NCBI GenBank assembly: GCA_950097015.1
Contig: CATNEN010000003.1
Location: 10,478,001-10,542,000 of the forward strand
Direction: 5' to 3'
DNA from: Macrostomum hystrix
Lineage: Eukaryota > Animalia > Platyhelminthes
Length of the DNA: 64,000 nucleotides
Notes under the pieces: model-generated
The model's input: the letters and a program-made list of their open reading frames with translations, nothing else
Databases searched by the model: none
Told to the model about the DNA's origin: nothing
Program-made: the position numbers and the translations under genes
Part shown: in pieces, positions 11,583 through 15,068 of the stretch
How the letters are laid out: every line of letters begins with the position of its first letter
Position numbering within the stretch: the first letter of the stretch is position 1

Positions 11583-11714
11583 ACCTGAGACTAGCCTGTG
11601 ACCTAGTGATGCCTGCGCTATAGTAGTGTCTAATATCTGCTGGGTGGTTAGGCTAGTCCAAGATAATTGATAACTTGCACTGCTTGTTTTCAGGTAGCAA
11701 CAACGCGGTCTAAT

Positions 11715-14700
11715 CATGGATGAATAATATAACTGGATCGCCAGAAGCTCGATTTTTTTGGTCCTAGCCATAGACAAGCACCAGCATCACAAGAAGCTCA
11801 GAATGCCGTACTTTCACACATAGACAAATTGCCGCTGCAGAAGCTGCAAACCTTTATTTATAAGTATACTTAGTAGGATAAGTGAAACTATTGCAAATGT
11901 GAAGGCAAGCAAAGAAGAAAACGAATATGTAAGGGAATTAATACAAAACAGACACGAAAGCAGGCAAGTAAGCAAACAAGCACGTAGACAGACAGCAAAC
12001 AAACAAACAATAAAAGGCGAAAACAAACAGCCAAATGAGTTGCAAGCAAACCGCGCAAGACAAAGGAGAGTCAAGTAAAGACAATAAATTCAAGGCGTCA
12101 CCCGCACAATGCTAATTTGAAGTCACTGACCCATGAAAATAATTTTTTTTGTTAGCATCTGACGCACAGTTGTTGTGTTCACAGCGTTAAGCCTCCGAAG
12201 TACATGCCGCAACCGAATGCAAAGATATTTCTTAGAAATCGCCTGCACTAGAAAATATTGATGGTTTTCTTCGGGTGCTCTATTGCTGCAAACGTGAGCG
12301 AAGAGTGACAACTCGATACCCTGTTGGATGCAGATTGGAAGTAGACGATCGAGTATGTCTAGAGACAGTTCGTCAGTTCTGACTCCTTTCACAGCCGACT
12401 CGCAAATGTTCGCCAGTCGGCAAAGTGATGCTGATGGTCGAAAAAGACGACCGCGATCTTTGAGAGTAGTAAGCAGGTTGGTGTGCATCTCGCAATGAAG
12501 AGATGCCTTGCAGTTTTCGCAAGACAGTCTGTTTGTAAGCCATCTGCCAATGAATCCAGCGATGTAGCAGCCGACATTCTGGCTAATGAGGCTGAGTGCT
12601 AATTGCGGTGGATCCTCGATTTCATCTTGTACACTGGCAGAAGCAGAGGTGGAGAGTCCAGGCGGAGGTGAAATCTGTGTCGAGAGGGACCAGTGCCCGA
12701 CAGATCCAGTCCTGTGCGCCAAAATCGCCCGATAAGCGTACCTGAACTGCTGAACGTTCGGATTGTTATTAAAACCACCTCTCTGACGAATCTCACCAAA
12801 GAAGTGTTCCAGCGGATCTTGGCATAAACGGTACGTCAGGAGGTACTTAAAGCAAGCAGACGGCTGATAGAAAATGTCCTGAAGTAACAGCTTCAGGGCT
12901 GTGATATTGTTGCAATATCCTACAGCCCATGTTTTTCGCCGACTCTCAATCAGCGGTACGCCATTAATCGTGTAGAGGCTGCGAATGTAGTCGCGCGCCT
13001 CATCGAGAAACGCGAATGTGGTCGAAAGGCTTGCTTGCGACTTCCAAATGGGACCTTTCCAGCCTGACGCCGACGGAGTCCTGCAAAAAACGGATGCAAA
13101 TTTAAAGGCCATGATTGCGCGTCTTTATGCTATTTTGGTTTAATATACCGGCTCACCTCGAGTTGAAGATGTCGAACAGATGGTCCATCAATGCAATAAA
13201 GCGGACCGTTTCATCACAATTTTGGAAATCCGAAACTCCAAGCTCCTTTAGGAATGTGAGAGCGTCAGCGACGGACGAACTGATTGTCTGTGCAGCCAAG
13301 CAGACCTTCATCTTGTGTCGCTGCCACAATTCAATGCATTTCTTTGTCAGCCGATTTCCGATTCGAACCCCCTCAGCTTCTTGCAGATTGTGCAATAGTT
13401 CCAGATAGTGCCAGTTGATGATGCGATCGTGAACAACGAATACTCCCAAATCGGCCAGCGAATTGCGCACCAACTTTATCAAATGACTGTTGTCAATGAA
13501 TGCGAATATGCGATCTGGTTGCGAACCGATTTGGAAATAAGGACTAGACGGCAGCTCAGCTCCAAGTTTCCTGTACGTCGCAAGGTTCGCAGAGCAACCG
13601 TCCGACACGAGCGCGCGTACAACGACGCCCTCATCGTTCATTGCGCTAATAGTACGCGTCAAAAGCTCCACTTGTTGAACCGGGGATGTTGCAGCGGCCA
13701 AAATGTAGGCAACTGGCACTTTCCACGGGCGCTGAAGATGGCAGGCCATGACAACGATTGCCTCAGAAGCAAGTTTGTGACCTAAATTTTCATGGATCCC
13801 TGAGTCACAATAGCCGACCACTCTTCCTTCGCTAGCTTCCCAACACAACTCCTTTCGAAGATGCATGCCATCAATGACTAGAGTCCAGTCGTTGCAAGCG
13901 ACGCCATCGAAGATCTGTTTCGATAGGGCTCCAACCTTCTTGACTCCAGCAATGGAAATGCCAGGCCTGCCATCCACTGCTCCAATCCAAGACCGCAAGG
14001 TTGACGGCGAAGGGAGGTGCATGAATTTTCTCAACTCTCGATATGCTTTTGGAGAGCAGAAGTTGATCCTCTCGGCGAAGTCTTTGACGTGGTTATTGAA
14101 ACCACCTGCGGTATTTCGTGGTTGTAAAGAAAACAGCTTGAGACCTTCAGAAGTCAACATTTGCTTTACATGTTTTAAGGTCGCTTCGGTACTTTTCCAT
14201 TTTGCAACGCGTGGACCAAAAGTCTTAATCGTGCGCTTCTTGTGCTTCAGCCGCATCAACAGGCGCTGTCGGGTGTTTGGTGGTGGGTCGACTGATGTGC
14301 GTGTGGTTGCCGCGCTGCAACTGACAGGCATCGGCATCTCAAACTCACAGTCTCCAGTAGCTTCGTTTGCATAAGAGTTTGGATCGTGGAAGTCAGTGAG
14401 CTCTTGCGGTTCAAGCTTAGTCCACTCAAGCTTCGGAACTGCGCCAGTCATCAGTCGCTTGCTCCTCCCATGAGCCTGCATGTCTCGCTGCTCGAAGTGC
14501 AGCTCACAAAGGAACTTACGAGCTCCGAATTTGAAATGTGGCTTTGCTTGCACATTGCTGTTCCACTGCGCTAGTCGATACGGATCACCGATTGGATAAG
14601 AAAAAAGGGTGACAGGTTTCGTGCCTTGTCCACTTTTGGATAGGCATCCGATTGCAGCACAAATTCTGACGTCCTTATTCATCTCGCGAAGCCATCTTTT

Positions 14701-14892
14701 GCCGCCCTGCATATATTGCGAGCATGTGCTTGGACATAAAATGGAATATTTCATAAATAAAGGTTTCTGCAGCGGCAATTTGTCTATGTGTGAAAGTACG
14801 GCATTCTGAGCTTCTTGTGATGCTGGTGCTTGTCTATGGCTAGGACCAAAAAAATCGAGCTTCTGGCGATCCAGTTATATTATTCATCCATG
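11715..14892 (-). mobile_element. Full-length autonomous P-superfamily DNA transposon (3,178 bp)
   Basis: Perfect 128-bp TIRs at 11715-11842 and 14765-14892, beginning CATGGATGAATAATATAA. Perfect 8-bp TSD GGTCTAAT at 11707-11714 and 14893-14900. Encodes a THAP-DDE transposase. Confidence 0.96.
12123..14682 (-). CDS. P-element/THAP9-like transposase, about 827 aa; exons 14682-13157 and 13080-12123
   Basis: THAP C2CH domain (CAAIGC...LFSYP...W...LCELHF...AVP). Catalytic motifs LVIDGM, LVSDG, DNSHLIKLVRN, QDPLEHFFG. A 76-bp intron (AG|gtgagc...ttttgcag|G) restores FDIFNSRTPSASGWKGP; 2484 nt with no stops. Confidence 0.93.
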
Positions 14893-15068
14893 GGTCTAAT
14901 TAGAAATTCTTCTTCAGTACTTGTAGCTTTGCTTACTAGATAGATAAGCAAAAATAGGCTTTTTTAATTTCAGCGATAATTCGTCCCGATGTCTATGGTT
15001 AAGACTATGAGATCTTGAAAAGTTAAATGCATAGATTAGAGTATAAGGTGCACAGCTACTCACAAATT

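What the first reader, a model, noticed from the sequence alone, without database searches (positions are those of the whole stretch)
11707..14900. Intact, very recent P-superfamily transposon with long perfect TIRs in a non-insect-looking genome
Seen: the two 128-bp TIRs have no mismatches (extendable about 15 bp across one indel), the 8-bp TSD GGTCTAAT is perfect, and the two ORFs splice into one uninterrupted 827-aa THAP + DDE transposase with D, D, DxxH and E motifs present. Known: the Drosophila P TIR is 31 bp, starts CATGATGAAATAAC and makes 8-bp TSDs. This terminus (CATGGATGAATAATATAA) is strikingly similar, but the TIR is four times longer; long TIRs are more typical of the Galileo branch, which makes 7-bp TSDs. 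Inference: a probably still-active autonomous element, possibly an undescribed family and a candidate native transgenesis tool.
Basis: partly seen in the sequence, partly recalled or inferred. Interest (0 to 1): 0.85.

Follow-up and report, generated by a model that had tools for sequence, protein, structure and literature searches.

The report
Recently active flatworm P-type transposon
This is an intact jumping gene of the same kind as the fruit-fly P element, sitting in the flatworm Macrostomum hystrix; it has moved very recently, has left cut-out scars, and turns up almost unchanged in sequencing runs filed under a different organism.

Summary
Window 11715-14892 is a 3,178-bp element with 128-bp perfect terminal inverted repeats (TIRs), an 8-bp target-site duplication (TSD) GGTCTAAT, and two exons joined in frame by a 76-nt GT..AG intron.

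The 827-aa product has THAP, HTH, split RNase H and GTP-binding domains. Its best solved-structure match, by sequence and by fold, is the Drosophila P transposase. The catalytic D271, D361 and D397xxH sit in invariant alignment columns.

The genome is the Macrostomum hystrix assembly (220,453,370 bases, 42 contigs). It holds:
- six full-length copies with 0-2 private changes each, every one with its own perfect 8-bp TSD;
- two internally deleted copies with microhomology junctions;
- at least five excision footprints between perfect 8-bp TSDs, keeping up to about 20 nt of each end, which points to a long staggered cut like P's 17 nt;
- a few old TIR-only relics.

The next-closest transposase in this genome is 51% identical; in public protein libraries the closest is 43-52%.

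New here: runs filed under another (coded) organism hold the whole element at about 99.0-99.6% identity but not its flanks, with many truncated derivatives. This suggests horizontal transfer.

No spliced transcript was seen in contigs. Repbase/Dfam could not be searched. It is a new member of a known kind.

The parts
11707..11714 (.). left copy of the 8-bp target-site duplication GGTCTAAT
11715..11842 (.). left TIR (the 3' end relative to the transposase gene), 128 nt and perfect; similarity extends to 11861 across a 7-nt indel
11737..11827 (.). two ~50-bp subrepeats inside the TIR, mirrored in the right TIR. Each carries a 14-mer (ATCGCCAGAAGCTC at 11737-11750; ATCACAAGAAGCTC at 11786-11799) and a 9-mer CATAGACAA (11769-11777; 11819-11827). 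Candidate transposase (THAP) binding sites (inference)
11853..11858 (-). AATAAA, the only canonical polyadenylation signal between the stop codon and the element end
12123..13080 (-). transposase exon 2 (318 codons plus stop at 12123-12125): RNase H C-terminal motif with catalytic E (DPLEHFFG) and a THAP9_C-like domain
13081..13156 (-). 76-nt GT..AG intron, phase 2. If it is retained, a TGA follows immediately and the product stops at 509 aa
   Evidence: the homologue P0037 ORF ends at the same point
13157..14682 (-). transposase exon 1 (ATG 14682; alternative in-frame ATGs at 14712 and 14754): THAP, P-type HTH, RNase H N-terminal half (D271, D361, D397xxH400) and GTP-binding insertion domain
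14765..14892 (.). right TIR (the 5' end relative to the transposase gene), 128 nt and perfect; similarity extends inward to 14753
14893..14900 (.). right copy of the 8-bp target-site duplication GGTCTAAT

Best explanation
This is an autonomous cut-and-paste DNA transposon of the P superfamily in Macrostomum hystrix. It has been moving very recently and is probably still competent.

Proposed mechanism (inferred from homology with the Drosophila enzyme unless stated otherwise):
- The spliced mRNA encodes an ~827-aa transposase.
- Its THAP zinc finger binds inside the 128-bp TIRs, probably at the two bipartite subrepeats per end.
- The split RNase H domain (D271, D361, E in DPLEHFFG), interrupted by a GTP-binding insertion domain, pairs the two ends and cuts them.
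- The cut is unusually long and staggered, about 20 nt. This is inferred from the footprints, which keep up to 20 nt of each end.
- Integration uses an 8-bp staggered target cut. This is shown directly: 13 of 13 TSDs are 8 bp.

The emptied donor site is repaired in two ways. End joining leaves footprints. Copying from a filled template that aborts leaves internal deletions with 2-4-bp microhomology.

The present copies descend from one founder sequence that entered or re-entered the genome recently. Because the same element at ~99-99.6% identity is present in runs of another organism label that lack the M. hystrix flanks, entry by horizontal transfer is likely (about 0.65).
For: Structure: TIR, TSD and intron confirmed.

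Family:
- Pfam gives THAP 6.5e-11, Tnp_P_element 9.5e-9, RNaseH_N 1.6e-26, GBD 9.6e-38, RNaseH_C 2.4e-14 and THAP9_C 2.5e-7.
- PDB 6p5a (Drosophila P transposase) matches at E 6e-18 and 2.4e-7 by sequence. It is also the top structural match: E 1.3e-19, TM 0.53/0.61, model pLDDT 83.
- The catalytic residues sit in invariant columns.

Mobility:
- There are six full-length copies at different sites. Each has its own perfect 8-bp TSD and carries 0-2 private substitutions in 3,178 bp.
- All six have an open exon 1.
- Two deletion copies (2,433 and 962 bp) have perfect TSDs and 2- and 4-bp microhomology at the junctions.
- Five footprints lie between perfect 8-bp TSDs, at C2:789185-789259, C9:1587950-1588002, C38:29706385-29706439, C30:4297570-4297640 and C5:~5524011-5524040. 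They keep 10-20 nt of the left end and 18-21 nt of the right end, plus filler.
- For comparison, Drosophila P transposase cuts with a 17-nt stagger (PMC7776569).

Recent arrival: within the genome, transposase identity drops from 100% straight to 51%.

Second organism:
- Runs X9 and X15 (organism C) cover 11715-14892 with 8 differences in 1,855 nt, 11 in 1,493 nt and 12 in 1,200 nt.
- Depth is zero over both flanks.
- Loose ends lie exactly at 11714 and at 14892-14894, leading into many different flanking sequences.
- TIR depth is 10-25 times the internal depth, and three internal-deletion joints are seen.
Against: - No contig in any of the four runs shows the 13157|13080 splice join. The one long contig from an RNA-like run (X2, 11813-14794) keeps the intron. 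Contigs drop minor forms, and none of the runs is on record as RNA.
- No empty-site allele of this insertion was seen.
- The organism names are coded, so the identity and distance of organism C are unknown.
- The annotated M. lignano proteome is in the protein library but holds no match to either exon. If organism C is M. lignano, the element is unannotated there.
- Old TIR-only relics at 76-94% identity show that related ends were in this lineage long ago. A purely internal revival is therefore not excluded by the M. hystrix data alone.
- The ~20-nt stagger is read from repair products, not from cleavage itself.
Confidence: 0.88

Rival explanations
1. A long-resident family had a recent internal burst, with no horizontal transfer. 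One surviving master copy amplified in M. hystrix, and the similarity in the other organism's runs has another cause, such as a sister species, introgression or mislabelled material.
For: Old TIR-only relics at 76-94% identity in M. hystrix show earlier residence of related ends. One of them is a 227-bp MITE-like copy with a 7/8 TSD. Labels in these runs are not fully reliable: run X2 is filed under organism B, yet it holds this exact insertion junction with 0 mismatches.
Against: No coding relic lies between 100% and 51% identity in the genome. Organism C runs from several studies lack both flanks at 90% likeness or better. They share differences from the M. hystrix copies (for example at 13641, 13708, 13768, 13785, 14109, 14123, 14290 and 14491). 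They also have many other insertion flanks and far more TIR-only derivatives.
Confidence: 0.25
2. The family was mobile until recently but is now silent (for example repressed by small RNAs or by truncated products), so the window copy is a fixed, inert insertion.
For: No spliced contig and no empty-site allele were seen. Two deletion derivatives keep the THAP domain: an in-frame loss of codons ~391-614, and a THAP-only stub. Intron retention would give a 509-aa product lacking the catalytic E. Both resemble known P repressors, the 66-kDa and KP proteins (PMC7776569).
Against: All six full-length copies keep open reading frames, perfect or 127/128 TIRs and intact splice sites. The element is covered end to end in RNA-like runs. 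Footprints match the present ends exactly and their TSDs are perfect.
Confidence: 0.3
3. The copies are an assembly artefact (uncollapsed haplotigs or duplicated contigs), not separate insertions.
For: The assembly paper reports residual duplicated haplotypes before purging (PMC10468722).
Against: All eight copies have different flanks and different TSDs.
Confidence: 0.01
4. It is a domesticated THAP9-like host gene rather than a transposon.
For: THAP9-type genes are domesticated in vertebrates (PMC7776569).
Against: It has TIRs, TSDs, multiple near-identical copies, deletion derivatives and footprints.
Confidence: 0.01

Closest known systems
Drosophila melanogaster P element (canonical, 2.9 kb)
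   Same: - 8-bp TSD.
- THAP, split RNase H and GTP-binding-domain transposase; this protein is the best sequence and fold match.
- Related end sequence, 17/22 positions.
- Intron-containing gene.
- Internally deleted derivatives.
- Footprints that keep a long stretch of each end.
- A near-identical copy in a second organism, which recalls P's horizontal spread (PMC7776569).
   Different: - Only ~24% identity over the catalytic region.
- 128-bp TIRs with internal ~50-bp subrepeats, instead of 31-bp TIRs plus separate 10-bp binding sites and 11-bp sub-TIRs.
- One intron instead of three, at a different position.
- Footprints keep up to ~20 nt rather than ~17.
- The NKSD stretch that I recall as the Drosophila GTP-binding NKXD motif is not conserved in the alignment.
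- The host is a flatworm.
Zebrafish Pdre2 / zfTHAP9
   Same: A P-like element outside insects with 8-bp TSDs and internally deleted copies (PMC10983969, PMC7776569).
   Different: Pdre2 has 13-bp TIRs, a single full-length copy and a transposase that excises but does not integrate. Here there are six identical full-length copies, 128-bp TIRs and genomic footprints.
[quoted passage not shown]
   Same: Long, internally repetitive TIRs (Galileo); THAP-type transposase.
   Different: They make 7-bp TSDs and have no introns (PMC3698922). This element makes 8-bp TSDs in 13 of 13 cases and has an intron. Its TIRs are far shorter than Galileo's.
Unnamed metagenome-derived relatives P0037-P0039 (43-52% identical)
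   Same: Same domain order. The P0037 ORF ends at the same FDIFNS+1 point, so the exon boundary is shared.
   Different: They are less than 52% identical and of unknown organism, with no ends available.

Membership tests
P superfamily of DNA transposons | N-terminal THAP zinc-finger DNA-binding domain | tested here: met
   Pfam THAP, E 6.5e-11, residues 8-85; PDB THAP domains 2d8r and 2ko0
P superfamily of DNA transposons | RNase H-like catalytic domain with the DDE triad and the [C/D](2)H signature (PMC8230255) | tested here: met
   D271, D361 and D397-x-x-H400 are invariant in 35 relatives. D361 aligns with D303, and the E of DPLEHFFG aligns with E531. The fold matches 6p5a
P superfamily of DNA transposons | GTP-binding insertion domain splitting the RNase H fold | tested here: met
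   Pfam TNP-like_GBD, E 9.6e-38. GTP dependence itself is not testable here
P superfamily of DNA transposons | 7-8-bp target-site duplication | tested here: met
   8 bp at 8 of 8 copies and 5 of 5 footprints
P superfamily of DNA transposons | long staggered donor cleavage (17 nt in Drosophila P) | tested here: inconclusive
   Footprints keep up to 20 (once 21) nt per end. This fits a ~20-nt stagger, but these are repair products, not cleavage maps
P family in the strict sense (versus Galileo and 1360) | 8-bp rather than 7-bp TSD; gene with introns | tested here: met
   criteria from PMC3698922
P family in the strict sense (versus Galileo and 1360) | placement inside the P clade in a transposase tree with Galileo, 1360 and THAP9 | not tested
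Nearest named hits are insect THAP9-like proteins at 33-37%
Galileo | 7-bp TSD, intronless gene, TIRs of hundreds of bp to >1 kb | tested here: not met
   8-bp TSD, one intron, 128-bp TIR
Horizontally transferred transposon | element far more similar between two species than their own genes or flanks | tested here: inconclusive
   The element is 99.0-99.6% identical in organism C runs, while both flanks are absent at 90% likeness or better. The species name is coded. A host MFS exon is only 56% identical in protein to its best M. lignano hit, which applies only if C is M. lignano
Horizontally transferred transposon | patchy distribution and a tree that conflicts with the host tree | not testable with these tools
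   No other Macrostomum genome is searchable here

The most novel reading that the evidence does not exclude
A P-type transposon is in the middle of, or has just finished, invading flatworm genomes by horizontal transfer between Macrostomum species. M. hystrix would be one of them, and organism C is most plausibly the laboratory model M. lignano. This would be a second natural 'P-element story' outside insects. The element would be still competent, cut with a ~20-nt stagger, and could serve as a native transgenesis vector.
Probability: 0.45. Interest if true: 0.85.

Novelty: new member of a known kind. Interest (0 to 1): 0.68.

Why it matters
Apparently competent P-type elements outside Drosophila are rare. 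The zebrafish element excises but does not integrate.

This family offers, in a culturable flatworm genus used for regeneration and reproduction research:
- six intact copies;
- natural deletion derivatives;
- genomic footprints that already suggest the cleavage geometry.

That gives three uses. It is a comparative system for the unusual P mechanism (GTP use and the long staggered cut). It is a possible case of very recent cross-species spread, which can be tracked in stocks and wild samples. It is also a candidate native vector for insertional mutagenesis or transgenesis.

Tried and rejected
- **New-site lead.** A loose end in run X5 looked like a new insertion site (flank GTGAACGAGTATATGAG). 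In the assembly that flank lies beside the old C37 TIR relic, so it is a repeat-bridged contig, not a new insertion.
- **First footprint reading.** The 30-bp palindrome at C30 seemed to lack a TSD. Reading further out showed a 71-bp footprint with TSD AGTTAGCA.
- **Naming organism C.** The M. lignano proteome is in the library but has no hit to either exon. Notes from the scan did not help.
- **Exact 24-nt end.** Searches of JGI metagenome contigs and of viral contigs gave no match, so there is no sign of a viral carrier.
- **Splicing.** No joint skipping 13081-13156 appeared in four runs of contigs. This is not evidence of absence.
- **Tree.** A tree with P, Galileo, 1360 and THAP9 was not built because no named reference sequences were available by reference.
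- **Repbase/Dfam.** Not available here.
- **Spliced protein.** The joined (spliced) protein was not sent to any search or fold tool. Exons were searched apart, and the join was used only inside local scripts to check the frame and number codons.
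Full report
**1. The observation**

The repeat finder gives one pair of inverted arms, 11715-11842 and 14765-14892, 128 nt and 100% complementary. The bases just outside are GGTCTAAT on both sides, at 11707-11714 and 14893-14900. The similarity between the ends continues for 12 more bases across a 7-nt indel, giving arms of 147 and 140 nt at 95%.

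Two minus-strand ORFs (13153-14778 and 12123-13112) are separated by GTGAGC...TTTTTTGCAG at 13156-13081. Removing these 76 nt joins AG|G in frame. A local script counts 2,484 nt, that is 827 codons and a stop with no internal stop. In-frame ATGs also lie at 14712 and 14754, so the N-terminus is uncertain by up to 24 residues. An AATAAA lies at 11858-11853, the only such signal between the stop codon and the element end.

The joined protein went to no search or fold tool.

**2. What the protein is**

- Exon 1 carries THAP (E 6.5e-11), the P-type HTH (9.5e-9), the N-terminal half of the RNase H domain (1.6e-26) and the GTP-binding insertion domain (9.6e-38).
- Exon 2 carries the C-terminal RNase H motif (2.4e-14) and a THAP9_C-like domain (2.5e-7).
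- The best solved relative of both exons is the Drosophila P transposase 6p5a, at E 6e-18 and 2.4e-7.
- An AlphaFold model of exon 1 (pLDDT 83) has 6p5a as its top structural match (E 1.3e-19, TM 0.53/0.61). Hermes, RAG1 and other RNase H-fold recombinases follow far behind.
- In an alignment with 34 diverged relatives, D271, D361, D397, H400 and D504 are invariant.
- These residues correspond to D230, D303, the D339xxH signature and D444 of the Drosophila enzyme. The correspondence follows the pairwise alignments for D361, D397/H400 and D504, and the VIDGMH/AFDEMK motif for D271, which HMMER placed two residues off. The residues' roles are given in PMC8230255.
- The E of DPLEHFFG aligns with E531.

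**3. The host**

The genome search reports 220,453,370 bases in 42 contigs. These are the figures of the Macrostomum hystrix assembly in Table 1 of PMC10468722. That paper leaves the repeats uncharacterised.

**4. Copies in the genome**

Six copies are full length (3,178 bp), each at a different place and each with its own perfect 8-bp TSD.

| Place | TSD | Change relative to the shared sequence |
|---|---|---|
| C3:10489715 (this window) | GGTCTAAT | private synonymous A at 12816 |
| C31:124111 | GTTTAGAG | none |
| C33:1347983 | GTTAAATC | one intron change |
| C3:2733188 | ACAAAAAC | one synonymous change |
| C1:11090703 | GTAGGGGC | one change in the right TIR |
| C38:27494121 | ATTCAAAC | one intron change and R144W |

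That is 0-2 private changes per copy, a star-like pattern from one founder. All six keep an open exon 1.

Two further copies have internal deletions.
- C38:26380067-26382499 is 2,433 bp with TSD GCTAAAGA and 2-bp junction microhomology. It has an in-frame loss of codons ~391-614 plus the intron. This removes the GTP-binding domain and the catalytic E.
- C38:20778453-20779414 is 962 bp with TSD ATCGAAAT and 4-bp microhomology. It keeps only the first ~74 codons, the THAP region.
- The first deletion's joint is also seen in run X5.

Within this genome the next most similar transposase is a 51% fragment, then 41% and 35%. No decayed coding copies of this family exist.

A few short TIR-only relics at 76-98% identity do exist (C37, C25, C33, C38, C39, C3:16047154).

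**5. Excision scars**

All places holding the 18-nt end were listed and read with their flanks. This gives five sites where two short end pieces face each other between perfect 8-bp direct repeats.

| Place | TSD | Content (left end + filler + right end) |
|---|---|---|
| C2:789185-789259 | GTCCTCAG | 20 nt + 34 nt + 21 nt |
| C9:1587950-1588002 | GTGCGGGC | 20 + 13 + 20 |
| C38:29706385-29706439 | ATAGCCAC | 15 + (AAT)n + 18 |
| C30:4297570-4297640 | AGTTAGCA | 20 + filler made of repeated end pieces + 18 |
| C5:~5524011-5524040 | GGCACAGC | 10 + 1 + 20 |

The retained pieces match the present element exactly and stop at about 20 nt. Drosophila P transposase cuts with a 17-nt stagger (PMC7776569 and PMC10983969), so long retained end pieces are the repair product one would expect of such a cut. 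I therefore infer a similar, slightly longer stagger here. This is an inference from repair products.

The 13 TSDs all begin with a purine (G in 8). Seven end in C. This points to a weak target preference.

**6. The ends**

Each TIR contains two ~50-bp units. Each unit has a 14-mer (ATCGCCAGAAGCTC or ATCACAAGAAGCTC) and a 9-mer (CATAGACAA) at the same spacing. These are my candidates for transposase binding sites; this is untested.

The outermost 22 nt resemble the Drosophila P end at 17 of 22 positions, and 1 of 5,000 shuffles scores as well.

**7. Other sequencing runs**

Names are coded.

Runs of organisms A and B:
- Run X5 (organism A, the label of the best DNA holder) and run X2 (organism B) hold the flanks and the element.
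- X2 bridges the left junction with 0 mismatches.
- In both runs the flank is much deeper than the multi-copy element, and the contig sets are small (47 and 54 Mb). They therefore behave like RNA, though no record says so.
- In X2 one contig covers 11813-14794 without a break and keeps the intron. No splice joint was reported in any run. Splicing therefore rests on sequence logic and on the homologue P0037, whose ORF ends at the same point.

Runs of organism C (X9, 2017; X15, 2023; six more runs at the same word share, from four studies in all):
- They cover the whole element and nothing of either flank.
- They show 8 differences in 1,855 nt, 11 in 1,493 nt and 12 in 1,200 nt.
- Many differences are shared by both runs; 11 are synonymous, 12 non-synonymous and 5 non-coding (including the window copy's own private change at 12816).
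- Contigs leave the element exactly at 11714 and at 14892-14894, into many different sequences.
- TIR depth is 10-25 times the internal depth.
- Three internal-deletion joints occur.

Organism C thus has its own, larger and more varied population of the same element.

Contamination by M. hystrix DNA does not fit: the flanks are missing and the differences are consistent across studies. By the number and dates of studies I guess that C is M. lignano. That is only a guess, and the annotated M. lignano proteome has no match. It is present in the library, since a host MFS exon finds its M. lignano relative at 56% identity.

Whatever C is, an element 99-99.6% identical beside flanks that are unalignable points to horizontal transfer or introgression. 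I put that at about 0.65.

**8. Comparison with what is known**

The element meets every P-superfamily feature that could be tested. It sides with the P family rather than with Galileo or 1360 on TSD length and on intron presence (PMC3698922). A tree with named references could not be built.

The closest proteins in about 15 billion predicted proteins are 43-52% identical and unnamed. The nearest named hits are insect THAP9-like proteins at 33-37%. The ESM Atlas also points to arthropod THAP/TNP-like clusters. The held literature has nothing on P-type elements in Macrostomum. Repbase and Dfam were not available.

**9. Verdict**

This is a real, intact P-type transposon that was mobile very recently.

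Noticed in passing
G000 genome-wide; window 17250-17502, 21630-22530, 49733-50108, 63031-64000; footprints at C24:1261362-1261399, C25:4457733-4457776, C38:16491071-16491113: A sibling family shares the first 11 nt of the end (CATGGATGAATGAATAGAATGG). It has 370 matches at 1 mismatch or fewer, often as facing pairs 0.4-2 kb apart, like MITEs. It has its own footprints between perfect 8-bp TSDs. Nearly the same motif is the core of 37-41-bp satellite arrays, including four arrays in this window, so these may be satellites derived from a transposon end.
   Followed up: partly
window 1-64000: The window is packed with more than 25 different minisatellite arrays, for example a 13-bp unit x 463 at 50499-56664 and (CTAT)n at 42007-43450. 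These explain the strong GC-skew blocks.
   Followed up: no
window 15073-15145: A tRNA-like multi-copy repeat lies 180 bp right of the element. Contig depth is 1,000-2,900 at 90-95% likeness in the RNA-like runs, and ARAGORN calls no tRNA. It is possibly a tRNA-derived SINE head.
   Followed up: no
window 10608-11743: The element sits 132 nt upstream of the first ATG (11582) of a Q/S-rich ORF with no Pfam match, in the same orientation as the transposase. A deep contig of run X2 runs from that gene 29 nt into the TIR. The insertion is therefore in a transcribed 5' region, as P elements often are.
   Followed up: partly
window 22873-23976 (+), 17896-18873 (-), 59782-61038 (+): Host genes nearby: a DMRT gene (DM and DMA domains), an MFS/monocarboxylate-transporter exon (56% to M. 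lignano BOX15_Mlig025363g2) and an AAA-ATPase ORF.
   Followed up: no
run X2 on window 11200-11743: A run filed under a different organism code (B) in the same study holds this exact insertion junction and 544 nt of flank with no mismatch. Either the label differs for the same species or samples were mixed.
   Followed up: no
G000:C25:2478386-2478612: A 227-bp MITE-like relic is made of two TIR pieces (88 and 113 nt, 89-92% identical to the present TIR) with a 7/8 TSD (TCTGCCAC / TCTGCAAC). An older wave of the same or a related family was therefore once in this lineage.
   Followed up: partly
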